Source of the DNA: Phallusia mammillata
Lineage: Eukaryota
Assembly: GCA_965637545.1 (NCBI GenBank)
Contig: OZ281501.1
Location: 17,422,001-17,486,000, forward strand
Length of the DNA stretch: 64,000 nucleotides
Reading direction: 5' to 3'
The notes under the pieces are model-generated. The model searched no databases. It was not told the DNA's origin and saw only the letters and a program-made list of their open reading frames with translations. The position numbers were made by a program, and so were the translations under genes. Shown piece by piece: positions 16,439 through 64,000 of this stretch; the first letter of the stretch is position 1, and the number at the start of each line of letters is the position of its first letter.

Positions 16439-19400
16439 TCACCCCGATACTGAGAACGCTTGCTTGCATGCCATAAGGGCGTCCATAGCAGTTGGGGAAA
16501 GACGAAGGTCGTTCAAGGTCCTGCCCTCAAATGACCTCTCGTAACCCCTGTATGTTGTCCATTTGCCTTCTTCTACACCTTTAGTATGAACTCCATCAAA
16601 CCTGAGTAAAATTGCTTATTTAAGTTGGTTAGTTTGTTTCATTTTTATCCTCGGTGGGCGGACAAAGCCTGAATGCGTTATGCTCACAATCAGTCCGCCG
16701 TCGAGCTGCCTGTTTTATTCCAAGTACATGAAATCGTTTTTTTATCCAATTTTTGACCCATGAAGTTGACTTCAATTTGATTCAACCCGTCAGGTTCCAC
16801 TGGGTTGAAGCAATGTCGATTAAATTTCTTGCTCAGGAAAACTGACGTGGCCAAGACAGGATTAGAACGCACAACCCTGTGACCTTGGGGTGGTTACGCT
16901 AGCCACTTGGCCATCATGGTTTTAACCACAGTCCGGATAAAACAGTAAATCTCATCCAGATTATTACATCTCACTAAATTTGCAAGATTGTGGTTATTTT
17001 AACCTTTTCGTTATAAATCACAGTACGCCAGGCCTTAAAAAAGACGTCGTACCAAATCAGTCGGTCACCAAGCCTTTTTATGCGAAAGTGATAGACTAGA
17101 AAAATCTCGCATGCGGTGGGATTCGCACCCACGACAGGAGTTATTCCGGGGGACTCGCGCTCTACCAACTGTGCTACATCGTACGCAGCACATGTTAACT
17201 TCGTAGTATGGGATCGACAGATCGACCATTGATAATATTTTTCTAGCCTTTGCCTTGTCATATATGAGAATGCTTGGGAGACCGTATTGATTCAATACGA
17301 GGCCTTTAATAGACCTGGCTATATGAGTGTGTCGTGATCGCTGGTAGGCATAGAAGCTGCAGGACTGATCCCAGTAACTTCATCTTAACTGATTATTGGT
17401 CAATCTGGCGATCCCCTACTACGAAGCTTACAGTGCAGCATACGATGCAGGCAACGGTGCTTGTGATTCGACTTTAGACGGGCGTACGCTTAAAACACGC
17501 CTATATACTGACCTCGCAACACCGTTGACATCTTTATAGATTTTCGTAATCTTTCCCTGGTGATATCTGACCCCGCCAGAATTATTTCCATCCGTTCCAC
17601 CGTAAGATCCTTGACTGAATAAAACGATCGTACCTACCCCAATATCGCCCTCCAGTGGGCTTTCGTCTAATGCGACATCCTGAAAAAACAAACAAAAAAG
17701 TTTCTAACGGTCGGCGGTTCATGATTCTAGTGTTGATGTGACAATATATTGTTCGAATGTAAAATTTCCCGGAGATTTTTGAGAGGATAAATTTTACGCC
17801 CAATTGAAACACTCTGGTAGAGTATTTTTTGTCGGGTTTGGGCTAAGAATAAAAAAATGGAATAAAATTGACTTAATTCGGGCCAAACTTCACACTTGGC
17901 CTTTTTTGTGCCGACATTTTACCAAATTTTGGGCCTAATTCAGGTTTTGTTATTAGGTTAAAGCCCGGGTTCGGGTTTGCACTTTCGGATACGAACCGGT
18001 TCCAAGCCCAATGTCAGGCTCGCTTATACAACTCGGGTCCATGTACACCAATATGTACAAGCAAACTTAATTATTGAACCATTACAATCCTCTACACTCC
18101 TTGTAGCTGCAGCGCGTTTGGCTCTCATCCACCAGTTGTGCCCGACACTTTTATGTGCGCCATAACGTTTTAACGTTGCGCAGCTATTTCCGGCTTGGTG
18201 ATTGTTTTAGTGCAATTGTGTCGCTATGTTTTCCTTCACCAAGCAAAATAAACTCTACTCAACTCATATTGCTCTTTTGAAATATTTCATTTACCCGATA
18301 TGACTGGACTCTGCCGGATGGGTCATTGTCGTCCCAATTCACTGTGTAGGACATTTTATCTTCGTCGAAACTTTCAATAGTCGCCATGAAATATGCCCAG
18401 AGCTGATGCAGGCAAACCACGTGATCCCCGGGCACTGGAGCGCGAAATTTCTGCTGAGTAGGGGCTTCCCCGGCAGGTACTTCTGGTGATTCGAATCCTG
18501 CCTGTTCTCGGATTGCAGCGCTGTGAGAAAAGTGGATTGACTGCAATAGGCGTTTTAAATGGAAGAACACACACCGAGAAAAGGAGGTAAAAAAAGGTCT
18601 AAAGATTTGTTTTTTAAAAACCTTAAAGATAATGTGCTGCAAGTTTCAACTGTTCAAACAGTCTTTTATTTTCCATATTTTCTAAAACAGTCTTATTTCA
18701 AATTAAGTGGTAAAATAAGAAATAAAAAAGTAAAAAATGTAAAAAACGAGATTAAATTTGTACATACAAAAAAGTAAAAGAAAAAGTAGGAAAACAAAAA
18801 ATAATTTATGAAGGCGTAAAGCGTTGGAGTTTCTTAAATAGATGTTTCAGAATTTTTATTTGCTTACCTTATTTCCACAATTTTCGAGTCTAGTTCTTCA
18901 ATATTTGAAACATTTTGAACATTAATAGCTGGGTAGGTTCCCGCTACCAATTTTCCTACTGTTGTTTCGAGCCATTCGTCACCTTTTCCTGAAGAAAATG
19001 CAAAATACTAATGTAAATATCATGCTCAAATTGCTGCAATCTAATTGCCACAATCTTATTTCTGCAAAGCAAATTACCAGAATGAAATTACCACCATAAA
19101 ATTGCCACGATGTAGATACTATTTTGAAATTGCCGCGATGACATTTTACCACGATGAAATTACCACCTTGGAATTAATCGGTTATTTACTAGCACCACCA
19201 TTCCCACAACATTGTATTTTAAACATCCATAATTGACATAAAAGATGAACATAAATTCATAACTTATGCGATCAGCCTTGAAGCGTGTATCTATGCAGAC
19301 CAGCGATCACGGCACACTCATATATAAATCACAGTACCCCAGGCCCTTTGAAGGCGTCACACCGAATCCGCGATTGATATAAAAAGAATAATATAATCTA

Positions 19401-22400
19401 TACATCACGGCATAGGGACAGTAAATGCCGATAAACGGGCAAAAAACATTGGAATAAAACATGTTGTCATGTTTACCTACTACAATGGTCACTAAAGGTT
19501 TCTTCAAAGATTTGGCAGCAAACTGTATTTCCATCCGGCAGTTGTCGCTGTTTGCATATTCCTGACTCACACAAGCCACAGCGATCTGACATTCCTTCAA
19601 AGCTTCGGCGATTTGCCCGAACTAAAAAACAACCCAACAGAATTTGTACACCACTGTTGTAAGTCGGGTCGGTTTGGGCTTCAGTTTCTGGAAAGCGGTA
19701 TCGAGTTGGGCCTGTCTTCACACTCTGCCTAATTTGTGTCGTTATTTACGCCTGATTCAGACTTGACAAAATTCCGGTTTGGGTCGAGTTTAGGGATTGG
19801 ACTTTTGGGTTCGGCCCCCAATTTCAGGCCTACTTAAAACTCTAAGTAAGGCACACAGACTTGTGTATACACTGAAATAATTGCGAAAAATGTACTTGAC
19901 GAATTCTGACATGTAGATTATTGACTCCTTTAGCAACAAGGAACAAGCATTTATGATAATTTGTGCTGGAAAAAAAAACTTTGGAAAATCTACTAACACC
20001 ATACCTCACGGAAGACCCACATTTAGCTAATTTTCGATAGGTGGCGTAAAGAGCACTTTCAGGGAAGGGTCGAGGTAAGCGACGTAGCATTTAAAATTTA
20101 ATAAAACTATAGCAAAAGAACACAGTTACTAATTTAAAACTTCCAAAACCTTTTTTCCCTACCCTACCCTTCTTTAGCCGCTAAATAACTAATTCAGCTC
20201 ATTACGTCACCTATCAAAAATTAGCTAAATGTGGGTCTCCCGTGAGTTACGGTGTTAATAGCTCTACCTACAACTTTTAATACAATCGATACTGTGACGT
20301 CACTATCATACCATTCCCATTCCGTCAGCGGCGCTCTCGAGTCGCTGAACGTCGATCCACGGTGACATGCTGAGGGCAGTGGAGAGCTTTTGGACGATCA
20401 CACGCGGGTCGCTGAATTCTTCACCAACGCATTTCGATATTTGTCGTCGTTTTTCGGCCTCCATTGAGTTGCTCCAGCAGTAACTGAAGAAGAAATCGGC
20501 TTTTCCCGAAACCAGAGTACTGCCTGCGAAGATTTAGAGTTTATTGGTTGGAAAATCTGCTAAAACTGCAAAATTTCATTGTGACGTCATATATATCTGA
20601 CGTGACGTAACATGTGTGACGTCACTATGGACGTAACTTGTGTGACCTCATTATGGTAAGAGTAGTTTTGGTATTTGTTCCTGATTAAAGAATATATAGC
20701 TAAATAAAATACAAGCTTTTATATTATATACCTGTCACAGTGACTCCAGATTCAGAAAATAAGTCCATTTGGCCGTCACCTGTCGCTGGGTGGCGCACTT
20801 GCTTGATTTCGACTTTGGGAAGAAAGTTTTTGATCGATCTTGCCAGTTCGGTCATCTTGTATTCTTCTACCTCTTTGTTCTTAAAGTGAATATAGAGTTC
20901 TCCGGCTATGAGAAGTCCCACTACTGTCATTTGCCACTGAAACGACCCAGTACCAACCTGCAAGACAGAACTAAAAGTTATCGTTCCTAGGAAAAAATAA
21001 TGTAAATGGATTTTACATTTTAGTCTGCTGTCAAGGCAGGGTTTGGAAACATGGCCTTGTGAGCAACTACAGGCGTGGTAACGGTTTGGCAACGTACATT
21101 TGAATAACAGAGTACAGGCAATATGTCCTAATTATAACTGGCAGCGTAGCCAAACGGGTAATGTATAACTGCCAAGTAATCACAAGGTTGTGGATTCTAC
21201 TCTTGTCTCGGGCACTTTAATTGATTTCCATGACCAAGAACATTAAGCTGAATTGATCCAGCGGGATAAATTGACTGAAAGTCACCAACTTTGTAATAAA
21301 TGAAATAATCCAACAAAAAATAATTCAACAGACTTGCAATACAGGCAGCTTAACCACCCCTGGTATAGACTGTGTAACTCTACCATTGGTGCGCACAAGC
21401 TTGTCACCACTGCGTTTTTTGTGTGTTTATCGTCCTAGTTGCTTTATAACAACTTTATTTCAATTTATGTCATTACCCTGATGCAGGCGTCTCGTTTCGG
21501 ACATCATCACGTCGGCATATTATAATAAAAACTGCTGGAAGAGGCTACAAATTTGTTAATCAAAACTTGTTTCCAGTTTCAAATGCCAGAAAGCGTTGAG
21601 TTTACATATGCTTTCTCGCTTTTAATTTCCTCCCCTGGGTTATATACACTGTGATAAAACGGCTTAAATCTTACCACAAGTGGTATAACTGGAAGTTTCA
21701 TAGTTTTCTTTGCATACTGAAACTCCATTCTGCACCGGTCGTTGCTCGCATATTCGTCGCTCAAACAAGCGATGAAAACTTTAGTTCGCTTCAAAGCTGT
21801 GACGATTTCAAGAAGTGAGTCTTCGTTGTCATTTTCCATTGTAAACACTGTGAGTCCTGAATCAAAGTATAAAAGTCACAAAATGGGGTTTTACAGTAAC
21901 AACCCTTTTGCACATGAGTCTTCGGACTGAAAACTTTAAAAAGTCTGAAGTTATTCACGTTTTTTTATGTTTAGATAGTCAGTGGTCGGCAACCGCCGGT
22001 CCGCGGCCCGGTACCGGTCCGTGAGGAGTTCGTTACCGGGCCGTACAATTTTTTAGGTTAAACGCTATAAAACATTTTCACCATATATCCCGGGGATGAT
22101 AAACTAATTTAAGCGATTTTATTGCTAAATATTTGTAGTTTTTATGAAGACCGGTCCGCGATAAAATTTTAGTTTCAAAAACGGTCCGCAGTGCAAAAAA
22201 GGTTGCCGACCCCTGACCTAAGTAATATCATCAGTATCTCATTCAAATTCAAACAGACTTTTTAAAGTTTTCAGTCTGCTATTATATGCGACTGTTGTCT
22301 CCATCTGTCCTACTGAGTCTCTGGTGACTTGTGATTTACAATATCCTACACAGTTTATAGCACATAATTCTTGCTTAATTTTTTCCGCATTTGAAAGCTT

Positions 22401-25400
22401 AAAAAAAAGTCATAACTGGGAGCAGCCCTGAAGTGTCCGTGCAGACCAGCGATCACGGCACACTAATTTATAAATCATTATTTGCCGGGCCTATTGAAGA
22501 CGTTTTACCGAATCATATAAGAATGTTAAAGAGACCGGCTTTTAATTCGGTTTGATGCCTTTAATAGACCGGGTGTAGTATTATGTTTCAAGTTGTATAC
22601 AATGATGGTATTCAAACGTTACGATATATCAGCTGCACATAACTGTTTTTGGACAAACGAAACGTTTTTTGAGGATAAGTCCTGAAGCGCTAATGCAGAC
22701 CAGCGATCATGGCTGTCCAGTCCCAAAAAGGCTCCTTTCGGGGGTTCGATTCCCACTGCAGGCTAGATTTTATGACTTAATTAATGCCTTGCTATATGTG
22801 GGAATGCTTGGAAGGCCGGTTTGATTTGCTATAACTCTTGAATATAGGCTCAACGTACTATCATTTGTTTACTAAGGGTTTACTAAAAGGACACAAAAAC
22901 ACAGACACAACTGTTTTTCGTTAGAAAGGTTTCAACAAGATACAGAACCAACCTCTATGACCATTTTACCTCTATGACTACTTACCCATATTGCGGAGTC
23001 GATTAACAATATCTCTCGGGTCACACATACTGTCCACCACAGATTGTTCGTAGGAGGGTGGAAGCTCTGTTCCTGGGATTTCCGCCCGTTGTATTGCGGA
23101 GGGACAATTGATTTTGGCGTAAGACACGAAAACGTGGATTTCGCCGTCGACTTCAGTCGTGCCTTGATTGCCTTCTGGTAAAAACATTAAAATCGTTGAC
23201 CCGCGCAGAAACATTACATTACGTTCAATTGACGATAAGGTACAATATGGGTCATCGACTATCATCCAATGATAAAAAGTTTCTTACCAAAACAATCCGA
23301 TATATATTAATATTGTTCCCCAAAATGTTACACTAATTTTAACAAAACCACAGGACTATGAACAATTGAAGGCTACGTAACATTAAAACATTAATGAGAC
23401 AAAACATTAGAGAGTACGCTAACTATCCAGGGGTCAACAGTCAGTATGAAAGCATGGAGACAATACATGATAAGTTAGCTGCAGACAGTACACTATGTTT
23501 CAACCTATATAAGGTCTCATCAGTGCAGCTGACAAAGTGACCAACCTGTTTCCGATTCTATGGACGCGAGAATATCAAAAACATTGGGCGGAGTTCGGAA
23601 ATCCTCTAGAGTGTAATCAGTAAATGTCTGACTGTAGTCCTGTAAACGAAAAAAATGTTAAATTTGTTTTTGGGCCTCGGGCAATAACTTTGCTCCGGTA
23701 TCAGTGTAGGGATAGTTAATATATATTAACTGGGAACATGGCTCTTGCTGTGGGTTCGAATCCCACCGCAGACTAGAATTTTTAAATCTATGCCTTGTTA
23801 TGTGTAGGAATGCTTGAGAGACCCGCTTTATACGGTATGACGTCTTCAATAGACCTGGTAGTGTATGTTTTTTTTAATGGTTTACCCCTTTTGCTCATTT
23901 TGCTCCGTTTCGACTTATTATGAATGAATGGTGAAAATAATAGTCAAATGTTAATGCGAATTAATTAATTTGCTATAGAGGAAACCCCGGTTAAACCGGA
24001 TTCGGTTAATCCGGATCTTCGCCTAATTCGGACAAAACTTGAGGTACAAATGATTTGTAATATGGTAAGGCTTATCGACATCAGTTAATCCGGATCCTAG
24101 CATAATCCGGACAATTTGTTTGGTCCAAACGGGTGCGGATTAACCGAAGTTTGCTACTTTCTTATATTTAACTCCAAACTTTGGTGAAAAAAAAAAAAAA
24201 AAAACTTCTGTTCAATCATCATGTACCTTGTATGTGACCCATTTGCCGTCTGCCTCTCCTTTCGTGTGGTGACCCTGGTATTTTGTATTTCCCGATTTGT
24301 CTTTGTATATTTTGTCAATTTCTCCTTCATGCCAGCGATAACCTCCACTCCGTACAATACCATGCACCTCTTGTTGACGGTACCTTCATTTTATGTTTAC
24401 GCATTGTTGTGTGTTTTTTGGTTTGATTCATTGTTTTACGTTGTATTCTCATTTACTGGAAATGACTTTATCAACACCAAAAACGCTTTTATTGATAACA
24501 TAATCTGCACATTAATTTAAAGTGAATCACTAATTTGGACTAGGGATTTGTAGTGCACTCTTCTTTTCGTATCTTGAAACTATACGGCAGGGTTTCTTTT
24601 CATGTCGAACCCCTTCCTCTTTCCCTAACACCGGTGGTTGGTATTTTTTACCACCTTTTTCCGCTCCATCCATAACCTTTTAACGTTGCGAAGATATTTC
24701 CGGCTTGGTGATTGTTTTAGTGCTATTGTGTCGTTATGTTTTCTTTCACCAAGCAAAATAAACTCAACTCAACCTTCGCCAAAATGCCAAGTAGTTTGAA
24801 GTTGCTAGCGGCCTAAAATTGAACCAAACTCGAAAGTGTGCAAGCCCGAAACCTGGCCTGAACGCTATTGGTCTTAATTTGGCCCTAATATTAGGAAATT
24901 TTCGGTATAAATAATGTCCATGGTGAAGTCAGGCCCGAATCAACCCCAATTTATTTAGACTTAAGCCCGAACCCAACCCGAAAAGGCGGCGCCAAATTAC
25001 AATTCTGGACTTAAATGCTAAACTGTAAAGCAGGGGTGTCCAACTCGAAAGCACCGCCGTGCCAATCTAGGTTTTAAAATATACTCGCGTGCCAACGTTT
25101 GGTACTTTTTCCAAACCATGTATTAAACGTCTTAACGGTAGAAAAGTTGTCAAACTTGTTTATGATACTCCAGAAACCTTTCATAGCATACCATGTCGCT
25201 TAAAGCGCAGAATCCATAACATGGAATATAATACGACAGCATAAAGGCCCGGAATGATCAAGAATTTGCCAGTTTCAAACGCCTAAAAGTAGACAGATCG
25301 AGTCTAAAAACGACCAATTTAATTAGTGGATTTGTGTAACCTTAATACTGATCATCTTTACTGAAGTTAGAATAACGGCCAAAAAGAATCAATAGAAAAA

Positions 25401-28400
25401 TATAAATTGCCTGACAAATCCTAATGTTTACCATCTGAATGTGCAAAAACTTGCGTGCCATTTTCAAATGCTCTGCGTGCCACTTTTGGCACGCGTGCCA
25501 CGTGTTGGACACCCCTGCTCTAAAGTCTAAAACAATGATCTGAGCAAAAAAAAATCAAAGCCAGTATATTTGTGATTTTTTGCTCGGATTATTCAAAACC
25601 GTGAGTAGTGTACCTAAAACAATGAGCTATATAATTTTAATGTGAAGAACGAAAATAAATTACTTACCGGCCTTGGTGGAATAAAACCTTCGAACCAACT
25701 CCAATTTGGTCTGCAGATGGAACTTGGTCAAGAGCCAAGTTGAAATAATCGATATTACGTCCAGTTGGATCGTGGTCGTCCCACTCTATCGTGTACTTTA
25801 ACGTCGACTTATCGAAGCTCACAATCGTGGCTAAAATATTTAAAAAATTACACGTGATATTTGAAAAAGGAATATAAATACCTAAACGTACATACTTTTT
25901 ACAATCAAAAAAATAAAACAAAAATGAAATACATGTTAATAAAAAAAAAACCTTTACTTCTTAAAACTTCTTATAACCCTAAAGTGCCTGTAAAAGGCTT
26001 GGTTTGGGCTGTTTTCACACTTTGCACTGACAATGACAACAGCGATTGTTGAAACTTCTGCACTACAATCTACACCAGTGCTCTTCAACCTTTTTAGTGG
26101 CACGGAATCCTCAAGGTGGTTTGTCTCACTTTGCGGAATCCCCATAAAATAGTTTTAACCAATGTAATAGGATACACCAAAGAAAAAACATGCATTTTAC
26201 TTAACACACCCCAAGCACAAAATAAAAGTTGAAACGCATTGCCATGTTACTTGTAACCGTCGTTTCAACATTTATCTCGCATTTTTGCCAGAGTGGCTGT
26301 GTTTATTACGTTAAGGCTGTCTTTATCACGTCACAATTGATCAATGGTGCAACCAAGGTTAACTACTAGATTAGATATTACGGGCGAGCATTGCTGTTCG
26401 CAACAATGATATTGTTATGATTCATATTTGTACAACAAACCGCTGCGAACCCCTGAGCAACCCTTAAAGATCACGGAACCCCTGTAAGGTTAGTCGGAAC
26501 CCCGGTTGAAGAGCCCAGATGTATTCTATACAAGAGTTTTCAGTACTGCGTTTTCAACATAATTTTTACATTCCACGGACTCGAAGCGTTATTCATACCT
26601 AGAGAATTACAAAATTCCAGGATATAAAACAATAATTATTTTTGTTAGAAACAGACCTTTTGATAAATTTGTGTTTTCAATGGCACTCCTAGCTATTTTG
26701 AAACAGTGTTTTGGCCGAAAACTGTCTTATACTCGTGTATTAAATAGGCGTGTATTAAATTTTTACTGATTAACTTTAAAAGTTCATTTACCTGTAAAGT
26801 ATTGCCACTTGCTCTGACCCCACATCGCCACCACGTGGTCATTTATTTGTGGCATATTTCTTTCTACTCCGTCTCCTGTGTCTACTTTCATAGCAGCCAT
26901 TGCCCCTAATGGCTTCGGTTTTGTCATCGCCTGGATGACACAATGTTTTGTTTTATGTTGTAAAATAATATTGATATTTTTACAAACACCGCTAATATGC
27001 ATCAAGGCTTGTAAATGAGTTTAAGAAAAGCGTTGTAATGTACACATTGGTATATCACGTTTAAATCCGAGTTGTACAGTACTGAAAATTGAGGCTCAAA
27101 TCTGAAAATTAAAGATCGAAACCCGGACTGAATCCGATTTAAAAAACAAGGCCCGAAAGTTGGTTTAAGGCAGACCCGGATCAAGCCTGTTTTGTTTAAA
27201 AGCCCAAACGCGATCCAAAAAAACACATTACAAACCTGGTTTACGCAAAATAGTTTTTTGTCAGTGATTTTAAATCCTGTTTGAAAGTAGCCGACATATT
27301 TTTTCCCCACAAACAGCCTTAACACATCTCCTTTAACATATATGTGTATGTTACGAAAAGAGTGCTGTTTTATCATACTTTTTCCCTAATAATCGACCTT
27401 TCTTGTATTATCGAGTTCGATTAATCTTCAACAATGTGTACACGGTGTAGCTGCAGCGCGTTTAGCCATAGTCCGCCAATTGTGCCCTTCACTGTTTTGC
27501 GCTCCATATAAAGTTTCAACGTTGCGCAGCTATTTCCGACTCGGTGATTGTTTTAGTGCAATTGTGTCGCTATGTGTTCTTTCACCAAGCGTAAAAAAAA
27601 CTCATCTCAACTTCAACCAACACTTACCGTATGGTTAAGTTCTGTTGTTGGGGATATAGGGGCAGAAGAGTTATTGGAAGAAGCAACAGACAGTTGAAAT
27701 GTGAGTTGTTCAACCGCTTTTCGTAACTCCGTAACTTCATTCTGAAGTTTTTGGTTGAATTGTTTCAGCGTTTCAATTTCCTTTGCTTGTTTGGTGATTG
27801 TTTTTTGCATGTCGTCATCAGGTTCAGAATCATTATCTAAAGTTAGAGGGCCGTAATTGTATTATATAACTTACTGATACAGAGAACATGGCATTGCTAT
27901 TATCCAAAGGTAATTAAATTAAGTTTGTTAAATACTGATTTTTGGGATGAAAAAACATTGGGTTTAATTACTGAACTGAAACGGTACACATGCCATAGTT
28001 AATTAAATTGGGCTTTTTTGTACTGATAAAACACAGGTCTATACATAAAGATACGGTGGCAATACTGTTTTGTTGTACGTAAGTAAGCTTCTTTTTGTAA
28101 TTGTTTTTCGGGGTTTTACTTAAAACACTTATATTTTTCGAACGCAAATCCATCGTAAACGTACATTAACAACACAAAATAGTTCATGTTTATCAATATT
28201 ATACAGCATGCGACCTATTAGAAAGAAAACGCAGGATAAAAATCCTGATAAAAGGGCGTTATGAGAGCTATCAGACAATAGTTAGCAGACCATTGTTGTT
28301 GGTTACTATTCTTTGTAAAGCAAAGGCACACCAACCGCAGTAAAAATGGAATAAAATTTACATCGCTTCAAAAGTTTTGTGTGTCTTAGGTATTTTACCT

Positions 28401-29272
28401 TAAATTAAAGTTCAGTTTTCATTGTGGCCTTATGTAGCCACATGCAGTAACAGAAGAATTTTCACAAGGCACAGCCAAAAGACATACAGGTATTTGCTAA
28501 AGGGTGCGCCCAAACAAATGTAAACAATAAAATGACAATCCCTAAGCCTTTGTAGTCATAACACTAGCGATTGTATGCCTACGTCCCTACGAATTGCCAC
28601 ATACACATTAAGAATATAAAATCTCCAACCCGAATTAACAATAAATCAGTGTATAAAATAACATACATATTGCACTGAACAATATTCTTAAATTGACAAT
28701 TACAATTAGGTAAGGTTTTCGTAGTAAGTTGATTTCAAGGATATTTAGAGGCATATACCACATTTTCCAACAACTAGTCTTGCTGTAATCTCTTACTTTT
28801 TCCGATACTGTAAGACTTAACTTTGTGACTAGTTCGAAAATACAATACAATTACATACGGACAGATAGGTTTTGCAACATACCTCCAAATGACGACATAG
28901 ATTTTAAACTTGGGTCTGATGGAAAACCTCTTAAATCAGCTGCAGGTTTTCTATTAGTCGAACCTATAACATAATTTCTTCTATAGTTGTTTAAATATAC
29001 TGTGTAATTTAAGTTTTTGTAAGCAATATAATTCCATTTTCTGAAGACGAAGAACCTATAACATAGTTTTTTGTTTGCTTGTCCATATAAACTGTGTAAC
29101 TTAAGCAAGTTTTTGTGTACATTACAATTACAAACAAATTTTACATTCCGTTTTTTTACTTGACTTTTTTTAACTTACTTGCAAAAGACGCTATCGATTT
29201 CGACCTTGGATCTGAAGGAAATCTCTGCAAATTACGGGCAGGTTTTCTTCTAGTTGAAGACGAGGAACCCAT
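16439..29272 (-). CDS. Uncharacterised double-TIR, double Tudor-like-module protein with predicted N-myristoylation; 16 exons (29272-29179, 28963-28883, 27836-27628, 26930-26792, 25830-25668, 24383-24227, 23639-23546, 23174-22986, 21856-21675, 20957-20732, 20523-20312, 19621-19477, 18988-18868, 18520-18295, 17679-17513, 16601-16439); 855 aa
   Basis: All 15 introns are GT-AG with consistent phases; 2568 nt open frame. TIR1: HVFVSY...VFIACLSDEYASNDRCRMEFQYAKK..LPVIPLVV. TIR2: DFFFSYCWSNS...WIDV...IAVACVSQEYANSDNCRMEIQFAAK..KPLVTIVV. Two homologous modules of about 155 aa (DHVV..W.YF.ATI.SFD....YT..WDD.DP.GR...IGVG..VLF.QG...SGG.R.H.G.I.KIYKD). N-terminus MGSSSSTRRK. Confidence 0.88.
16846..16920 (-). 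mobile_element. Second tRNA-derived SINE head family (related fragment on + at about 52500-52550)
   Basis: Minus strand reads TGGCCAAGTGGCTAGCG...GCGTTCTAATCCTGTC (A/B-box-like); similar GGGTTCTAACCCTGTC at about 52525. Confidence 0.45.
16995..17355. mobile_element. Inverted pair of tRNA-derived SINE fragments (minus copy about 16995-17185, plus copy about 17220-17355)
   Basis: Minus head TAGCACAGTTGG...GGTGCGAATCC; plus body GAATGCTTGGGAGACCG...AATAGACCTGG...GTGTCGTGATCGCTGGT, also seen at about 22790-22850 and 23790-23840. Confidence 0.7.
17780..18035. mobile_element. Dispersed GCCCGAA/TTCGGGC-rich element family (other copies about 19650-19830, 24780-25015, 27060-27290, 45130-45330, 51150-51240, 51780-51935)
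   Basis: Recurrent internal motifs (AAGCCCGAA, GGCCCGAAA, GGGCCTAATT) and ends resembling CAG(A/T)GTTGTAA / TTACAA(C/T)TCTG; boundaries approximate. Confidence 0.6.
18086..18270 (+). repeat. About 190-bp interspersed repeat, three same-orientation copies inside the TIR gene (also about 24660-24775 and 27440-27615)
   Basis: Shared core AACGTTGCG(C/A)AG(C/A)TATTTCCG(G/A)CT(T/C)GGTGATTGTTTTAGTGC...TTCACCAAGC ending in AACTC-type tail repeats. Confidence 0.85.
19290..19400 (-). mobile_element. Tail of the same tRNA-SINE family (reverse orientation)
   Basis: CTATGCAGACCAGCGATCACGGCACACTCATATA is the near reverse complement of about 17322-17355. Confidence 0.7.
21980..22215. mobile_element. hAT-type MITE (truncated sister copy about 55278-55462)
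   Basis: TIR CAGTGGTCGGCAACC...GGTTGCCGACCCCTG; the internal sequence is repeated at 55278-55462. Confidence 0.85.
22440..22850. mobile_element. Cluster of rearranged tRNA-SINE fragments in both orientations (further plus copy about 23700-23840)
   Basis: GCAGACCAGCGATCA tails at about 22441 and 22696; B-box GGTTCGATTCCC at about 22744; body GAATGCTTG; GGTTCGAATCCC at about 23754. Confidence 0.7.
23976..24155. mobile_element. Tc1/pogo-type MITE, reverse-orientation sister of 36934-37288
   Basis: CGGTTAATCCGGATC and GGTCCAAACGGGTGCGGATTAACCGAAGTTTGCT match the RXR intron element in reverse complement. Confidence 0.8.
25031..25517. mobile_element. hAT (Charlie-like) MITE
   Basis: TIR CAGGGGTGTCCAAC...GTTGGACACCCCTG; 8-bp TSD CTGTAAAG/CTCTAAAG (1 mismatch). 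Confidence 0.9.
26076..26518. mobile_element. hAT-type MITE
   Basis: TIR CAGTGCTCTTCAACC...GGTTGAAGAGCCCAG; TSD degenerate. Confidence 0.7.
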
Positions 29273-57578: not shown

Positions 57579-59268
57579 TCAATCTTCTGAGAGTTTACTA
57601 AAAAACGACTGCAGTTCTTGAAGGGCAAGGCCACGGTGTGAAATTTTGTTCTTTATCTCTAAATCCATTTCTGCATATCTGCAAGAGTGAATAACTGAAA
57701 ATACTTAACCGACAATCAAGATGCTTCAACATAAGTTGAACAAAACTAAAAGTATATTTGAAATTCCTTGGTAATTATGCAAAGGCCTCTGAACTTTAAA
57801 ATACTTATTTAAAACAAATAAACATTTTTAATTCCAATTGTCAGATTTTTTCATGTGTTTGCTGTTAGGGCATACACACAAGCTCAATAAGCACATATTT
57901 GCCAACTGTGAGCAATTTTAAAGTTCTGTTGTATTTTATTTAATGCTTAGCATTTCTTAGCAAGATTTCCTGTTTAAAACCAAAAATGTAAAAAACAAGC
58001 ATTTACACAAACGTTTTGCACAAACATTTACATCCTTTTGCTGTGCAAAAATCTTGGAAGAAAGTTGATGACTGCCATCAAATTTAACTGCTTACCTCAG
58101 TGTGTCATAAAATGCAAACTTACGTTGTGTCGTAGCCATTGGGCAGAAAACATGGATCCCAACCAAATGTTCTTGGACCTCTAGGAGGGACAATTGTACC
58201 CTGCATGAAAATTTAAGCATCAGGTCTGTGAAATTTTTTGTGAATTTCACCTCATAAATATTTACGTCACATTTTCCGCGAAATAAAATCACGTCATCTG
58301 AGTTGCCACTGCAATATGCAAAAGTACAAAGTGCATAGGCAGATTTATCTTCCCAACCATCCAGCATTTTGTATATTCCCTCTGGTCCCAACTTTGTCAG
58401 AAACCATTTGCTTCAAAAACAAAGTCAGTAAACTGTTTTTTTAATGTAAAGCATAGGAAATCCTCTTTTAAATGTAAACATGGACAAATTATCATGTTTT
58501 AATAAAAAACTACATTTGAAATAAATGTAAAACAAGACTATTACATCACTACTTTTACAACTGTACTAAAGTTTGTTCTTAGAAAATTTAAAACAAATAA
58601 ATAGCAAGTGCTGTGAGTCTGGAATAATAAACATAACCACATGCAACATATAACTAACATGTAGGGGCCAGGAAGGCCACCCATTGCATTAAAACATAAA
58701 CATGTATCCTCAATCAGCACTGGACCCTTCAGTTGTTTGGCAGCTTCTTTGCATTTAAACTTTGACACATCATCAGCTTCACCTTGATATTCTGGAACTG
58801 GAAATTTGAACAATATTTTCATTTCTAGCAGAACATTTTAGTTTCTTAGCAAGAGGTACAATAAAATTCAATTACAACATACTTTTCGGGAATTTATCAG
58901 AATAAAATTGATTGGTAAATTTGATATGACACATTAATAAATCGTATCATAATATTAAAAAGTTTTAATAAACACTTAAGGCAACATTTCATAATGACAT
59001 AATATAATGTAATTATGTATTAAATAGTGAACAACAGATTTAAAGATGTAAACTAAACTTCCTGGTTGTGTTTTAACAATTGCTTTTGATCATGGTAAAT
59101 AATACAGCCTGGTTTTTAGTTTTGTTCCATTGCTAGAGATTACAAAAATAAAAACTTACGATCAATTGACACACTTGTCACTTCAATTTTGTCATTTCCT
59201 CTTAAAATCGACGTCACTTCTTTGAGTTTATTTTTGTTTCCAGTTACAAACGTTATTGCTTTTTTCAT
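57579..59268 (-). CDS. ITPA: Inosine triphosphate pyrophosphatase; exons 59268-59160, 58797-58659, 58410-58266, 58200-58124, 57678-57579; 189 aa
   Basis: [58 protein letters not shown] and KNKISHR motifs; phases consistent. Confidence 0.97.
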
Positions 59269-60087: not shown

Positions 60088-63000
60088 TAGAGGCCCAACT
60101 GCAAAATGGATGAGAGAAGAGCTTTCCCCTTCAGTGCAAATTCCACATCCTTTTCTTGCATATTTAGTTTCACCTACAACAAATAAATACGGATTAAGAC
60201 AAAGAATACTTTAATGCTATAATGTAGACCGGTTTCCTAAGCCTTCTAATACCATTATTTCACACTGGTTGGTTAAAATTAAAGCTAGAAACTTGCCAAA
60301 TCTTCCAAAAGTGCAGTAACACATAGGGTCAAAAAGCCCGGTTTTAAAAACACAAAATACATGCTACACTGTATTGCTCAAAGTTTGCTTACAGCAGAAT
60401 CAATAATATTAATTTTTTATGAGTTAGAGAAATTCATTTTACTTGCAACATGTTTTTTTTCTATATTGATTAACAAAAAAGTAAACATACACAAGCAAGT
60501 ACCTTTGATTGTCTAACTTGCTTAGCTTTGCGCGTACTAAGAATTCCTCTTGACTCAACCAATTCACAAAGTGACACAAACTCTGATTGTCCGACTGCAG
60601 GAACTTGTCGCTTTTTGCATATTGTTGTGTAGGATTCATGCAGCTGCAATTGGAAAAATATGTTAGATTGGAAAAGAGTTTGATTAACTCAGAAAAAAAA
60701 CACAGAGACAAACTTCCAACAACAAATGAAGCCAAAAGTAGGTGCAAAATGTTAAAATAATATCAAGTGCAATAAAACATAGCTAAGTGTGTTGCAGCTA
60801 CATGCAGGTTTTTTTTTAAGGTTTGGTGACCGCTAAGTAGTTTTAGTTTTAAGTAGTTTTAAGAGACCGCAAGTGTTTCATTTAAATACCAAAAAATAGC
60901 CATATTTGCTTAAACGAATTATTTATTAGGCTACTGGCAAATTTTGGGAAACCGCTGGAGAAATTTGGGAACCGTTTCGGTCCCCCAAAACACCAACAAG
61001 AACCTAGCAAAAAGATAGGTTTTGCATTATTTATATGCTTGGCTTATACTTTTTGATTGACATCCAAGCCATACACAAAAACACACAACTTTGAAATACT
61101 ATGAAGCACAAAATTGATAGATCATAGCTTCATGCATTACAAAAAAATAACAAGGGCAAAATGAAAGGAAAGTTTTGCATTATTTATTGGCTTTGGTTAT
61201 TGATTTTCTCCGAATATTGTACGATTGGTGTGATGTTTATTTTATGTCATATATCTATATTAAATATCAACAATACCTTTCCCATTGGGACTTCTTTGCA
61301 CTTGGAGGTCTTGCATAGCAGGAATAATGTACATACAACCAGCTTTTGTTGTAATGGAAAAGTGTCGTCATTGTCTTGTTCGCAGGAGGTTTTTTGCTGA
61401 CAAAGGTTGCTTGAATCGTAGACACCTTGCATAATGTTGGAGATTTGTTGCAATCCAACTTTTTGAGGGACAGAACCTATAAAGGGAAGACATAAAAATG
61501 AAAAAAATACATATGTAAAACAAGTGCTAGTTCTATTGGTGGAAAAGTAACCAATGACAACTAGTTTTTGGCATCAGAAAAAAAATTGTTAACTGATCAT
61601 ATTAATCCCCTTTTATTGTATTTGGAAATGTTGTGCTTGTGATATCAAATGCAATAAACACCGAAAAACATGAACTTACTGTTAGTGTCTGTTGATTTGT
61701 TTCTTGATGTTTCCACAACTTCGACAGCCCTGCGACAAACATCTAAAGCTTTTCGTGCGTCTCCAGTCATGGCTGCAACTTTCCTTGCACAAAATTGAAT
61801 TGCCATTGGATCGATGAGACTTGGATCTGACAGATTGTTTTTATTTTTAGCCTGCAAAATTATAACACAGAAAACATTTTATTTTTCACATTAAATGAGT
61901 TACAACTAGATTACGAACCTAATCAAAACATACTTGTGTATACAGAATACTTCTTAGTGCAAAGGTTTTAACAAACGCTGTTTCAATTATTTTGGCCTTT
62001 GTGTTTACCTGTTGTACTCTGGCTTGCAAAATCTTGACAAGTTGGTCTTTTGTGTACGGTTGAAAGTTCATAAGGTTAGGTTTGCAATCCGAGCGAGCTT
62101 GAAGCCTTAAAAAATTTATTGTTACAAAAGCACCACAAAAAAATCAATTTCTGTTTAGTTATTAAACAATGTTAACATTTTTAGAGAAAATGATTATTTT
62201 TGCTATTTGCCTTAGCAAAACTATTTGCCAACTTTTCATATTGTTTGGGATAAGTTGATCACTGACTTATTATAGTCTATGGACTAAAAAAAACTAAACC
62301 AAGGGCACAAGAAAACTATCAGCATAATGATAAACTGTAATCAATAAGCTAGATAGTACCTGGGCAGTATTCTGTCTGTCAAGTCAAGAGAGTTTGCAAT
62401 TCCGATCAAAATCATGCGAGAGTTTTTGAGACTTGACCATCCAAACATCGTGTACAACACTTCCTGGTGTTTGCTATCTAGCTGGTCCATCTCATCCAGA
62501 AACAAAAGTCTAAAATACCAAAATCGCATTTAAAACTTGTTGATTTTCTGAAGAGTTTTTTACAATTAATTGGAATTGTTAACCTACATCATTTCACCCG
62601 AAGATGTCAAATGATTTTCAATGTATTTCAGAGCAGATCTGGAGGTCTTCGATTGCCGACTTAAAGCACCAAGTTGTGAAGCAATGCACTGATAAATGGA
62701 AGCAGCTGACCGAATGGACATGCAATTGACGTTAATGATTTGTCCAACCATTGCTTTTACCTAAAAATACCAAAAATGTTGATTCTGCTTCCAGCTGATT
62801 TTAACAAGAAAATTATAGCTTATGTCAGTAGCCTACAACATTCCCATCTGTATATAACACAGACCCATTTTTTATACCTTCGTTTGCGATAAAATGTTCA
62901 GCATGCAAGCGCTTTTTCCAGTTCCTGGGGCACCAGAAATATACAAACTGCCAGCGGTTCGATTGTTAGCATGATCCGAAATAAAGTTTGTGATTTCACT

Positions 63001-64000
63001 AATTTCGCTTCCACGCCCAACAAGCGTTGCAGGGGCAGCATTATGCAGTGCATGCTTTATCTTGGAGAAGGAAGAATCTGTAAAAAATCATAAAACCTTC
63101 ACTGCTAACATGAATAGATAGTGGTATTTCAAGATATGCTTTTTGGAAATTATGTAACAAAACAAAGAAGTACGAATGATCTTAAGATTTTTTTGTGCAT
63201 TACGGTGCAACAAATTTAGTTGCAAACACAATATAACAGATAAAGACACCCATACAACAAGCAGTTATTTTTGTCATTTCAAATATACCTTTGTGTCCAT
63301 GCTTAATTGGTGATTTCACATTGACTTTGATCTCTTTGACAGGAACGTTATGATGTTGAGTTTCAATAAGAACCTTACGAGTAGATTGTTTTGAATCTGA
63401 AACTTCTTTTTTTCTTGGGCTAGAACATTTTTCACTGCCATCTGTTTTTCTGGATGGCACTTCTAGAGTTTTTAACTTATTAATCTTCTGTTTCTTAGTT
63501 GGTGATGGAGATGCGGTTTTGAGGCTAGCATCCAAAGATCTTTTGGGTGAAACTTGCTTCTTTGGAGATGAAGAGTTATCTTTTTGTGGTGAACTAAAAT
63601 TTAAAGTGTTGGAAACATCTCCCAGTGGTAGTTTAGTTGGGGACTTCTGTAATTGCGTACAGTAACCCGATGTTGGGATAGTCGACCCAGAGAGCGCAAG
63701 ATTCAAACGATTTTTAACAAACGCACTTTGAGCAGCCTCTACTTTTTTGCTCCTTGGTGAATTTAGAGTCAGCGAGCGCAAAGGTGAAAGCAAAATTCTG
63801 CAGTTCGAGACACTTGGTTTAATATTTTCCTTGCATCGCTTAACAGGCGACACCGGTGATAGCTTAAAAATTTCATCAAGGACATTGTCATCAATTAGGG
63901 AATGTCCTTCTAGTTCAGGCAGCTGTTGGCCAAGTAGGTTTAGACGCTTGCTTGCCGACTTCGTTAATGCTGCTTTTGAAACCCCAAGGCATTTCTTGGC
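60088..64000 (-). CDS. CDC6: Cell division control protein 6 (5' end lies beyond the window); exons >64000-63289, about 63078-62878, 62760-62588, 62510-62360, 62107-62009, 61854-61679, 61477-61273, 60643-60503, 60174-60088 (inner boundaries approximate)
   Basis: LVGRGSE, GSLYISGAPGTGKS (Walker A), INCMS, LFLDEMDQL (Walker B), LIGIANSLDLTDRILPRL, FQPYTKDQL, GDARKALDVCRRAVE and PLQQKLVVC; winged-helix SEFVSLCELVESRGI. Confidence 0.97.

What the first reader, a model, noticed from the sequence alone, without database searches (positions are those of the whole stretch)
19477..23174. Both TIR domains retain the putative catalytic glutamate and a TIR_2-type signature
Seen: TIR1 SDEYASNDRCRMEFQYA and TIR2 SQEYANSDNCRMEIQFA both carry the S..Y..S/N..C..E helix-C pattern. 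Both have an insertion after the FxSY strand ending in DPR. TIR2 has a WID BB-loop entry; TIR1 is degenerate there. Established: the helix-C Glu is the catalytic residue of SARM1, plant NLR TIRs and bacterial TIR NADases (e.g. Thoeris ThsB); TLR adaptor TIRs are generally inactive. Inference: an intramolecular TIR pair could form a composite active site producing ADPR or cyclic ADPR isomers. The SYCWSNS...DPR motif recalls, from memory and unverified, TIRs of invertebrate LRR-ROCO proteins.
Basis: partly seen in the sequence, partly recalled or inferred. Interest (0 to 1): 0.8.

Follow-up and report, generated by a model that had tools for sequence, protein, structure and literature searches.

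The report
Tandem TIR pair in Tudor-flanked gene
An intact sea-squirt-type gene encodes a protein with two TIR immune-signalling domains flanked by tandem Tudor modules; both TIRs keep the glutamate that NAD-cleaving TIRs need, but only the second looks like a conserved active site and no activity has been shown.

Summary
Window 19477-23174 (minus strand) covers five of the six exons of two adjacent TIR domains. They lie in an intact 15-exon, 828-aa gene (29272-16439). Both quoted helix-C motifs exist (TIR1 E393, TIR2 E586). Both exons pass the Pfam TIR_2 cut-off. The long post-strand-A insertions ending in DPR and the TIR2 W-I-D are real.

The gene is not an LRR-ROCO protein. It is the tunicate ortholog (63% to Ciona, 57% full length to Clavelina) of an uncharacterised family found in choanoflagellates, cnidarians, echinoderms and tunicates. 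Its order is N-terminal MG, coiled coil, tandem Tudor, TIR1, TIR2, tandem Tudor.

The two TIRs are not equivalent. TIR2's Glu is kept in 59 of 60 members, with invariant SYCW.NS, DPR, W.D and NC..E motifs, and its fold is closest to SARM1. TIR1's Glu is Q or L in most choanoflagellate members and its BB loop is not conserved.

Evidence against cyclase activity:
- Neither TIR has the WxxxE tryptophan.
- Two TIRs of the same SYCW-DPR subtype were inactive in a 2026 preprint screen.
- Glu retention is the norm in non-TLR animal TIRs.

Catalysis is plausible for TIR2 but unproven. The scan noted the architecture on this same stretch (s1-394844).

The parts
16439..29272 (-). Whole gene: 15 exons, 828 aa. 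Order is MG start, coiled coil, tandem Tudor 1, TIR1, TIR2, tandem Tudor 2, stop.
   Evidence: All introns are GT-AG and there is one open frame. The protein is colinear with Clavelina, Ciona and Styela orthologs. The exon D start was corrected to 24383 from the ortholog alignment.
22986..23174 (-). TIR1 exon 1: strand A (FVSY), 32-residue AA-loop insertion, DPR cap, helix A.
   Evidence: In the ortholog model: strand 7-12, short helices, helix 44-53.
21675..21856 (-). TIR1 exon 2: strand B, short unconserved BB loop, helix B, strand C, helix C with SDEYASNDRCRMEFQYA, strand D.
   Evidence: Pfam TIR_2 at 1.4e-7. Family alignment.
21723..21725 (-). Codon of the TIR1 helix-C glutamate E393. Position E-4 is R389.
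   Evidence: The column is E in 50 of 60 members, Q in 7, and L or H in others.
20732..20957 (-). TIR1 exon 3: highly conserved D/E region (G.GSF.W..VVG.LIAGELYIHF), helix E, and a roughly 35-residue low-confidence linker to TIR2.
   Evidence: pLDDT is below 50 at model residues 172-181.
20312..20523 (-). TIR2 exon 1: strand A and AA loop (FFSYCWSNS), 23-residue insertion, DPR cap, helix A, strand B (W-I-D), BB loop ending GMGM.
   Evidence: Invariant F, S, Y, W, S, G, R, W, D. This exon was the query that recovered the family.
19477..19621 (-). TIR2 exon 2: helix B, strand C, helix C with SQEYANSDNCRMEIQFA, strand D.
   Evidence: Pfam TIR_2 at 1.7e-6. Aligns to plant TIR helix C.
19529..19531 (-). 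Codon of the TIR2 helix-C glutamate E586. Position E-4 is N582.
   Evidence: The Glu column is E in 59 of 60 members and the E-4 column is N in 58 of 60.
18868..18988 (-). TIR2 exon 3 (outside the finding's range): G.G..W, D/E region, helix E.
   Evidence: Invariant G, W, G.
23546..26930 (-). Tandem Tudor module 1 (exons 26930-26792, 25830-25668, 24383-24227, 23639-23546).
   Evidence: 50% identical to module 2. Tudor_3 lies above its cut-off in the Clavelina ortholog. The fold was tested on module 2.
16439..18520 (-). Tandem Tudor module 2 (exons 18520-18295, 17679-17513, 16601-16439, including the stop).
   Evidence: AF2 pLDDT 90.8 and pTM 0.85. Foldseek hits are 53BP1, SETDB1 and UHRF1 tandem Tudor at prob 1.00, with weak E-values (about 1e-4) and modest TM-scores.
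27628..29272 (-). Exon 1 (29272-29179, MGSSSS start) and exon 2 (27836-27628, heptad-rich probable coiled coil).
   Evidence: An MG(C/S)..S start is shared from choanoflagellates to tunicates. Lipidation and the coiled coil are inferred from sequence only.

Best explanation
This is an intact gene for the tunicate ortholog of an old, uncharacterised holozoan protein family. The domain order is N-terminal MG (probable myristoylation), coiled coil, tandem Tudor, TIR1, TIR2, tandem Tudor. The anatomy and family membership are shown.

The two TIRs arose by a duplication older than the choanoflagellate-animal split, and they have different roles.
- TIR2 is the functional core. It is SARM1-like in fold. 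It has an invariant helix-C Glu (E586) surrounded by invariant AA-loop (SYCW.NS), DPR, W.D/BB-loop and NC..E residues. These are the elements that line the NAD pocket in SARM1 and plant TIRs.
- TIR1 keeps the Glu in animals (E393) but not in most choanoflagellate members, and it has no conserved BB loop. Its D/E surface is very conserved. It most likely serves as the non-catalytic partner that receives the TIR2 BB loop in a head-to-tail (BE) pair, within one chain or between coiled-coil-linked chains.

Inferred mechanism: the protein sits at a membrane, and the Tudor modules bind a ligand, possibly a methylated protein. This drives TIR assembly, which opens one active site per pair at TIR2. 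That site cleaves NAD+ or a related nucleotide. Because the WxxxE Trp is missing, the product is more likely ADPR or canonical cADPR than a 2' or 3' isomer. Catalysis itself is not shown.
For: Gene model and colinearity.

Family: 50 hits with the TIR2 exon, many of 740-850 aa with the same domain order. Named members come from Salpingoeca, Monosiga, corals, Nematostella, Hydra, Lytechinus, Ciona, Clavelina and Styela. The best matches are Ciona at 63% and Clavelina at 57% over the full length.

Duplication age: TIR1 and TIR2 split on one branch with 100/100 support, and each side holds both choanoflagellates and animals.

Conservation: the TIR2 Glu is kept in 59/60 and N at E-4 in 58/60, while the TIR1 Glu is kept in 50/60.

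Fold: TIR2 against human SARM1 TIR gives Z 14.9, rmsd 2.3 A over 124 residues, 25% identity. TIR1 against SPARTA TIR and Hydra TRR-2 gives Z 15. SARM1 is the top Foldseek hit.

Glu register.

Pocket elements in SARM1 (beta A, AA and BB loops, alpha B, alpha C): PMC7075850.

Precedent for two TIRs of one chain forming one pocket: Raw, PMC13455253.

Active cADPR-making TIRs without an aromatic residue at E-4 exist, namely Lingula (L), S. rosetta F2UB80 (N) and Guillardia (H).

Tudor fold. Conserved MG start.
Against: No enzymatic data exist for any family member.

The two tested TIRs with the same SYCW.NS...DPR...W.D...C..EF signature gave no cADPR isomer or NAD depletion in E. coli (Table S4 rows 136 and 137, Rotaria and Dimorphilus). 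Three other NC..E-type TIRs (Clytia, Aphanomyces, Rhizoclosmatium) were also negative.

The WxxxE Trp is absent. L6 W131A and ROQ1 W82A lose NADase activity.

The helix-C motif is as close to TLR1/10 (C-H-Y-E-F/L-Y-F-A) as to known NADases.

The relative orientation of TIR1 and TIR2 is not confidently predicted (pTM 0.55).

The structure was predicted for the Ciona ortholog, not the window protein, because the spliced window protein has no reference.

No exon was covered by contigs of four probable RNA runs.
Confidence: 0.48

Rival explanations
1. Non-enzymatic scaffold. The TIR pair nucleates TIR-TIR assemblies at a membrane, like MAL/MyD88 or TLR TIRs. The invariant helix-C, AA-loop and BB-loop residues are a protein-binding surface, and the Glu is kept for structure or binding.
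For: - The helix-C motif aligns well with TLR1 and TLR10.
- Structural neighbours include MyD88, IL-1RAcPb, IL-18R beta and Hydra TRR-2 at Z values equal to the NADases.
- Only 12 of 61 Glu-bearing animal TIRs were active.
- Both tested SYCW-DPR TIRs were inactive.
- There is no WxxxE Trp.
Against: - A Glu invariant in 59/60 members across more than 600 My, set in a pocket-forming group of invariant polar and aromatic residues (S, Y, W, N, S, D, N, C, E, Q), is more typical of a ligand or active site than of a flat interface.
- TIR2 is nearest to SARM1 in sequence and fold.
- No MyD88-like death domain or kinase-recruiting part is present.
Confidence: 0.3
2. Both TIRs are catalytic and together form a composite intramolecular active site that makes ADPR or cyclic ADPR isomers (2'cADPR or 3'cADPR).
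For: - Both Glu are present in the window protein and in nearly all animal orthologs.
- TIR active sites are built from two TIRs.
- Raw needs both of its TIRs.
Against: - The TIR1 Glu is Q or L in most choanoflagellate members and in one Hydra paralog, so the ancestral protein worked without it.
- The TIR1 BB and AA loops are unconserved.
- An aromatic residue at E-4 was found in 12 of 12 cyclase TIRs surveyed and is needed for cyclisation. Here it is R and N.
- The isolated SYCW-DPR TIRs made no isomers.
Confidence: 0.12
3. Signal receiver or degrader. The TIR pair binds or hydrolyses an ADPR-type signal made by another enzyme such as SARM1, as Raw hydrolyses cADPR, rather than cleaving NAD+.
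For: - Raw precedent: two TIRs form one pocket with essential Glu residues, give no NAD hydrolysis, and hydrolyse cADPR.
- The absence of NAD-derived products from SYCW-DPR TIRs expressed alone fits this idea.
Against: - No sequence match to Raw surfaced in any search.
- The architecture differs from Raw's DD1/DD2 layout.
- This idea is purely an analogy.
Confidence: 0.08
4. The gene is a dead or mis-assembled copy with no function.
For: No exon was covered in four small probable RNA runs.
Against: - There are fifteen exons, all with GT-AG introns, and no stop or frameshift.
- TIR1 is 78% identical to Ciona TIR1.
- The runs are small contig sets that prove nothing about silence.
Confidence: 0.02

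Closest known systems
Uncharacterised holozoan MG-coiled coil-tandem Tudor-TIR-TIR-tandem Tudor proteins (e.g. Ciona intestinalis LOC100182474, Clavelina lepadiformis LOC143468110, Styela clava LOC120344759, Nematostella LOC116604300, Salpingoeca rosetta PTSG_10079, Monosiga brevicollis MONBRDRAFT_27923)
   Same: Full-length colinear similarity (57-63% to tunicates, 45-49% to corals, about 33% to the choanoflagellates S. rosetta and M. brevicollis). Same domain order, same MG start, and the same TIR1 and TIR2 signatures.
   Different: Nothing of substance; this is an ortholog. The window's own protein was not found in the collections searched.
SARM1 TIR domain (NAD+ hydrolase/cyclase, catalytic E642)
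   Same: It is the best structural match of TIR2 (Z 14.9, rmsd 2.3 A, 25% identity). It shares a similar strand A (D-V-F-I-S-Y type), a strand B/BB-loop entry (hydrophobic-D-V/I-E-K/R-L) and a helix-C Glu.
   Different: This gene has no ARM or SAM domains. SARM1 has W638 at E-4 where TIR2 has an invariant N. SARM1 has SYRR where TIR2 has SYCW. TIR2 carries a 23-residue AA-loop insertion with a DPR cap. Sequence similarity to SARM1 is marginal (E about 0.7).
Raw (Drosophila), a two-TIR cADPR hydrolase (PMC13455253)
   Same: It has two TIR domains in one chain, unequal, both needed, and proposed to form one pocket with essential Glu residues.
   Different: It belongs to an unrelated family by sequence. 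Its TIRs are hundreds of residues apart and it has dimerisation domains instead of Tudor modules. No NAD hydrolysis was reported for Raw. Nothing is known for this family.
SYCW-DPR TIRs of giant invertebrate proteins (Rotaria A0A818LFL5, 2825 aa; Dimorphilus A0A7I8VYT1, 2178 aa; cluster representatives Capitella R7TDS1_2 and Trichoplax B3S268_2) in Hurieva et al. 2026, Table S4
   Same: They have the same TIR subtype as TIR2: F-I-S-Y-C-W-x-N-S, an insertion ending D-P-R, W-M-D, C-V-S-D-E-Y...C-x-x-E-F, and G-T-G..W. These proteins also carry a second TIR that often lacks the Glu (M in Capitella, L in Dimorphilus).
   Different: They are far larger proteins with other domains. Their architecture was not verified here; the placozoan study describes roughly 3000-aa placozoan TIR proteins with LRRs, classed ecTIR-DC 14 II, but whether B3S268 is one of them was not checked. 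No Tudor modules are recorded for them. The similarity was read from the table and not aligned with a tool.
Cat1 (CRISPR-associated TIR 1, bacterial NADase filament)
   Same: It is the best sequence match in the PDB for both TIR profiles (E 5.3e-6 for TIR2, 2.2e-3 for TIR1). The match covers helix A to strand D and includes the helix-C Glu region.
   Different: It is bacterial and CARF-linked, and it has the W-C-W-D-E-L motif with Trp. The match is only about 75 residues long.

Membership tests
Pfam TIR_2 (PF13676) | Score above the curated gathering cut-off (28 bits) | tested here: met
   The window exons score 32.5 and 28.9 bits. Whole TIR1 and TIR2 of the Ciona and Clavelina orthologs score 31.9-48 bits.
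TIR fold | Flavodoxin-like beta-alpha fold superposable on solved TIR domains | tested here: met
   In the AF2 model of the Ciona ortholog pair (pLDDT 86), both halves reach Z 13-15 against SARM1, SPARTA, RUN1, MyD88 and TRR-2. The test was on the ortholog, not on the window protein.
Catalytic TIR NADases (SARM1, plant TNL TIRs, AbTir, ThsB) | Glutamate at the helix-C catalytic position | tested here: met
   Sequence and profile alignments place E393 and E586 on the Glu of SNC1, RPPT, Cat1 and TLR1/10 with the same S..Y..S.xC..E spacing. Both lie early in helix C of the model. A residue-level 3D superposition on SARM1 E642 could not be done because no coordinates are returned.
Catalytic TIR NADases (SARM1, plant TNL TIRs, AbTir, ThsB) | WxxxE motif: an aromatic residue four positions before the Glu | tested here: not met
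   The residue is R389 in TIR1 and N582 in TIR2. N is kept in 58/60 family members. It is not absolute: active TIRs with L, N or H at that position are listed.
Catalytic TIR NADases (SARM1, plant TNL TIRs, AbTir, ThsB) | Conserved, intact BB loop | tested here: inconclusive
   In TIR2, the W.D entry and the G-M-F end are conserved. The TIR1 BB loop is short and unconserved. The criterion is therefore met for TIR2 only.
Catalytic TIR NADases (SARM1, plant TNL TIRs, AbTir, ThsB) | Glu-dependent NAD+ turnover | not testable with these tools
   This needs a bench assay. The nearest published data are two same-subtype TIRs that were inactive in an E. coli lysate LC-MS screen.
SARM1 orthologs | ARM - SAM - SAM - TIR architecture | tested here: not met
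   All 828 residues are accounted for by the coiled coil, two tandem Tudor modules and two TIRs. There are no ARM or SAM hits.
Holozoan Tudor-TIR-TIR-Tudor family | Full-length colinear homology with the same domain order, and orthology of each TIR | tested here: met
   BLASTP aligns residues 1-814 of the first gene model (816 aa) to residues 1-849 of Clavelina at 57%. In the tree, the window TIR1 falls in the tunicate TIR1 clade (97/93) and TIR2 in the tunicate TIR2 clade (100/99).
   No such Pfam hits appear in the window exons, the orthologs or the other proteins recovered with the TIR2 exon.
Raw-type two-TIR cADPR hydrolases | Sequence homology to Raw and its DD1/DD2 dimerisation domains | not tested
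   No Raw sequence was available under an id. Raw never appeared among the hits. The comparison is by analogy only.

The most novel reading that the evidence does not exclude
This is a pre-metazoan, membrane-anchored, Tudor-gated TIR enzyme. The two tandem Tudor modules read a methylated or other modified ligand and switch on an intramolecular TIR1-TIR2 head-to-tail pair. The single composite site of that pair (E586, in an NxxxE/SYCW variant of the TIR active site) makes an NAD+-derived signal. On this reading, it is a signalling module shared by choanoflagellates and many invertebrates. No vertebrate member appeared among the named hits, although vertebrates were not specifically searched.
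Probability: 0.15. Interest if true: 0.85.

Novelty: new variant of a known kind. Interest (0 to 1): 0.5.

Why it matters
Which animal TIR domains are enzymes is an open question. Until 2026, SARM1 was the only accepted animal case.

This family offers a clean test case:
- It is present from choanoflagellates to tunicates.
- It is usually one or a few copies per genome.
- It has a tandem TIR pair in which one domain keeps an invariant Glu in a non-canonical (NxxxE, SYCW) pocket while the other has partly lost it.

If TIR2 is active only together with TIR1, that would explain why isolated SYCW-DPR TIRs scored negative in the published screen. It would also give a second example, after Raw, of a single-chain composite TIR site.

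The flanking tandem Tudor modules suggest an input, reading of a modified protein, that has not been linked to TIR signalling before.

If the family is inactive, it shows that an invariant helix-C Glu does not by itself mark an enzyme.

Tried and rejected
- LRR-ROCO membership was rejected. There are no LRR, Roc or COR domains in the gene, its orthologs or other proteins recovered with the TIR2 exon.
- I first guessed a mollusc origin. That was rejected because the nearest named proteins are all tunicate.
- I looked for the window's own protein in the collections so that it could be folded. It was not found. The spliced protein has no reference and I did not type it in. I therefore folded the Ciona ortholog segment (63% identical overall; TIR1 78%) with a 53-row family alignment.
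- Residue-level superposition on SARM1 E642 was not possible, because the fold tools return ranges and scores only.
- The profile search of the PDB gave only Cat1 below E 0.01. SARM1 matched only the helix A to BB-loop part.
- PADLOC gave only faint ThsB and SAVED-TIR hits (E about 2e-3), which is not evidence of kinship with defence TIRs.
- For expression, four probable RNA contig sets cover only intronic repeats and no exon. This is uninformative.
- In the literature, no held paper combines a TIR domain and a Tudor domain in one protein. The Dev Comp Immunol paper that defined the ecTIR-DC classes is not in the library, so I could not check whether this family has an ecTIR-DC number.
- I considered using the missing WxxxE Trp as a disqualifier and softened that view after finding active TIRs with L, N or H at that position.
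- My first gene model lacked 12 residues at the start of exon D. This was corrected from the ortholog alignment.

Full report
**What is there**

The region lies in AT-rich (about 37-40% GC) intron-rich DNA. Reading the minus strand gives a chain of stop-free pieces. These join through canonical GT-AG introns into a single 15-exon open reading frame, from ATG at 29272 to the stop at 16439-16441.

Comparison with orthologs showed that my first model had lost 12 residues at the start of one Tudor exon. The corrected exon starts at 24383, and the protein has 828 residues.

- TIR1 is encoded by exons 23174-22986, 21856-21675 and 20957-20732.
- TIR2 is encoded by exons 20523-20312, 19621-19477 and 18988-18868.

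The finding's ends are exact exon ends, but the last TIR2 exon lies just outside its range.

**The observation**

- The TIR1 helix-C motif is at residues 381-397, with Glu E393 (codon 21725-21723).
- The TIR2 helix-C motif is at residues 574-590, with Glu E586 (codon 19531-19529).
- The two core exons alone pass the Pfam TIR_2 gathering score, at 32.5 and 28.9 bits against a cut-off of 28.
- TIR1 and TIR2 are 39% identical to each other, with an alignment score 26 sd above shuffles.
- After strand A, TIR1 has 32 residues and TIR2 has 23 residues before a D-P-R that caps helix A. Typical TIRs have a handful there.
- TIR2 has W540-I541-D542 at the end of strand B. TIR1 has nothing conserved at that point.

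**What the gene is**

A full HMMER scan with the first TIR2 exon returned 50 proteins. Many are 740-850 residues long and hit at the same relative position. BLASTP of the gene model against them shows colinear similarity over nearly the whole length.

Named members come from these groups:
- the choanoflagellates Salpingoeca rosetta (PTSG_10079), Monosiga brevicollis and three other Salpingoeca species;
- corals, Nematostella, Actinia, Hydra and a jellyfish;
- the sea urchin Lytechinus;
- the tunicates Ciona, Clavelina and Styela.

All are labelled uncharacterised. The window protein is closest to Ciona intestinalis (63%) and Clavelina (57% from residue 1 to the end). The window therefore comes from a tunicate that is not among those sequenced proteomes.

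None of the named hits is a vertebrate, arthropod or nematode. The searches were capped, however, so absence is not shown.

The flanking modules are 50% identical to each other. A model of the C-terminal one (pLDDT 90.8) matches the tandem Tudor domains of 53BP1, SETDB1 and UHRF1, at Foldseek probability 1.00 but with weak E-values and modest TM-scores. The Clavelina ortholog passes the Pfam Tudor_3 cut-off.

The N-terminus starts MG(C/S)..S in choanoflagellates, cnidarians and tunicates alike, and is followed by heptad-rich sequence. This suggests a lipid anchor and a coiled coil, inferred from sequence only.

No LRR, Roc or COR domain is present anywhere.

I found no paper in the held library that describes a protein combining TIR and Tudor domains. 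The paper that defined the ecTIR-DC classes is not held, so I could not check it.

**The two TIRs are old and unequal**

A maximum-likelihood tree of 20 TIR1 and 20 TIR2 domains separates them on a single branch with 100/100 support. Choanoflagellates and animals appear on both sides. The duplication therefore predates animals.

In a 60-member alignment:
- The TIR2 Glu is E in 59 members. The exception is a locally broken S. rosetta model.
- The residue four positions before it is N in 58 members.
- The TIR1 Glu is E in 50 members. It is Q in four of the five named choanoflagellate species and one Hydra paralog, L in Monosiga and H in one sequence.

TIR2 has 12 invariant and 18 nearly invariant columns. 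They fall in these elements:
- strand A and the AA loop (F.SYCW.NS);
- the DPR cap;
- strand B (W.D);
- helix C (S..Y..S.NC..E.QFA.K.L.K);
- the D loop (VG.G..W).

These correspond to the elements reported to form the NAD pocket of SARM1 and plant TIRs: beta A, the AA and BB loops, alpha B and alpha C (PMC7075850).

TIR1 has 4 invariant columns, and its AA and BB loops vary. Its D/E region (G.GSF.W..VVG.LIAGELYIHF) is strongly conserved.

**Structure**

The spliced window protein has no reference, so I folded the Ciona ortholog's TIR1-TIR2 segment with a 53-row alignment. The mean pLDDT was 86 and the pTM 0.55. The linker was below 50, so the relative placement of the two domains is not reliable.

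- Foldseek's best hit is the human SARM1 TIR.
- VIA-align puts SARM1 on TIR2 (Z 14.9, rmsd 2.3 A over 124 residues, 25% identity).
- VIA-align puts SPARTA TIR, Hydra TRR-2, MyD88 and RUN1 on TIR1 (Z about 15).

Both glutamates lie early in helix C, directly after strand C.

Sequence and profile alignments put the Glu on the equivalent Glu of SNC1 and RPPT, Cat1 and TLR1/TLR10. The Glu is therefore at the catalytic position as far as alignment can show. A residue-level superposition on E642 was not possible with the tools.

**What that Glu is worth**

A 2026 preprint from the Sorek laboratory (10.64898/2026.04.20.719644) bears directly on this.

- It reports that most non-TLR animal TIRs keep this Glu.
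- Of 61 Glu-bearing animal TIRs expressed in E. coli, 12 made a product, mostly canonical cADPR.
- Its Table S4 includes two TIRs with the same signature as TIR2 (F-I-S-Y-C-W-x-N-S, insertion ending D-P-R, W-M-D, C-V-S-D-E-Y...C-x-x-E-F, G-T-G..W). They come from 2825-aa Rotaria and 2178-aa Dimorphilus proteins, and both have an empty 'Active' field.
- Three further NC..E-type TIRs (Clytia, Aphanomyces, Rhizoclosmatium) were also negative.
- The giant proteins also carry a second TIR that often lacks the Glu, which mirrors the asymmetry seen here.

The SYCW-DPR TIR subtype does occur in very large invertebrate proteins, although this gene is not one of them, and I could not verify that they are ROCO proteins.

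Manik et al. (10.1101/2022.05.07.491051) describe the WxxxE motif.
- An aromatic residue at E-4 was present in all 12 cyclase TIRs they surveyed.
- W204A in AbTir cuts cyclisation.
- L6 W131A and ROQ1 W82A lose activity.

Here the residue is R in TIR1 and N in TIR2. This is not a disqualifier, because active cADPR producers in Table S4 have L (Lingula), N (S. rosetta F2UB80) or H (Guillardia) at that position.

**How it most likely works**

The anatomy, the family and the age and inequality of the two TIRs are shown. The rest is inferred.

TIR2 is the functional site. TIR1 is a partner that offers its conserved D/E surface to the TIR2 BB loop. TIR active sites are known to be completed by a second TIR through the BE interface. 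Raw shows that two TIRs of one chain can build one pocket.

The coiled coil and probable lipid anchor would concentrate the protein at a membrane. The Tudor modules are the likely input.

I put about even odds on the account as a whole. Within it, I give roughly 40% to TIR2 being an enzyme at all, and a lower chance to a cyclic isomer product.

The main rival is a purely scaffolding TIR pair (0.3).

**Expression**

Four small probable RNA contig sets of the same species covered only intronic repeats and none of the TIR exons. This says nothing either way.

**Verdict**

The strong reading, that both TIRs are catalytic and make cADPR isomers, is not supported. What remains is an unstudied, deeply conserved tandem-TIR family with one very well conserved, SARM1-like but non-canonical pocket, and it is worth a bench test.

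The same stretch was noted by the scan as a novel architecture (s1-394844). My results agree with that description.

Noticed in passing
window 60400-64000, minus strand: These exon-like ORF pieces look like a CDC6/ORC1-type AAA+ protein, with a Walker A GAPGTGKS and an LDEMD box. This is the upstream neighbour of the TIR gene.
   Followed up: no
window 58095-58837, minus strand: Two ORF pieces resemble inosine triphosphate pyrophosphatase (ITPA). This was recognised by eye from the translation and not tested.
   Followed up: no
window 19294-19308, 22440-22454, 22694-22708 (minus strand), and the surrounding introns at 19250-19400, 19990-20300, 21460-21545 and 21980-22400: A 15-base motif occurs three times in introns of the TIR gene, against none expected by chance. 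These intron stretches are covered at 90-99% likeness by many unrelated contigs of other runs. They are therefore dispersed repeats. No tRNA-like gene was found there.
   Followed up: partly
window 29272-29255 (codons 1-6) and orthologs P0072, P0081, P0061, P0013, P0067, P0017, P0022: The N-terminus MG(S/C)..S is conserved from choanoflagellates to tunicates. It fits an N-myristoylation signal (plus a palmitoylation Cys in cnidarians and some choanoflagellates) ahead of the coiled coil.
   Followed up: partly
window 18295-18520 and 25668-26930 (first Tudor of each module): The first Tudor of each module has W..Y/F ... Y-T-V/I-x-W-D-D-x-D-P. This resembles the 53BP1 methyl-lysine cage pattern (W, Y, F-D-D-G-Y), but with the last aromatic residue replaced. 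W40, D41, D42 and D44 are invariant or nearly so. This was read by eye and not tested structurally.
   Followed up: no
Family tree: Within tunicates, TIR1 is better conserved than TIR2 (78% against about 60% to the nearest ortholog). Across the whole family, however, the TIR2 key motifs are the invariant ones. The two domains seem to be under different kinds of constraint.
   Followed up: no
P0070, P0074, P0076, P0078-P0083, P0085, P0088, P0089, P0094, P0095, P0102, P0103 (unnamed and Hydra members): Many members, including the Hydra and several unnamed ENA/Logan proteins, carry an extra N-terminal zinc-finger hit (PF05605, zf-Di19 type) in place of part of the coiled-coil region.
   Followed up: no
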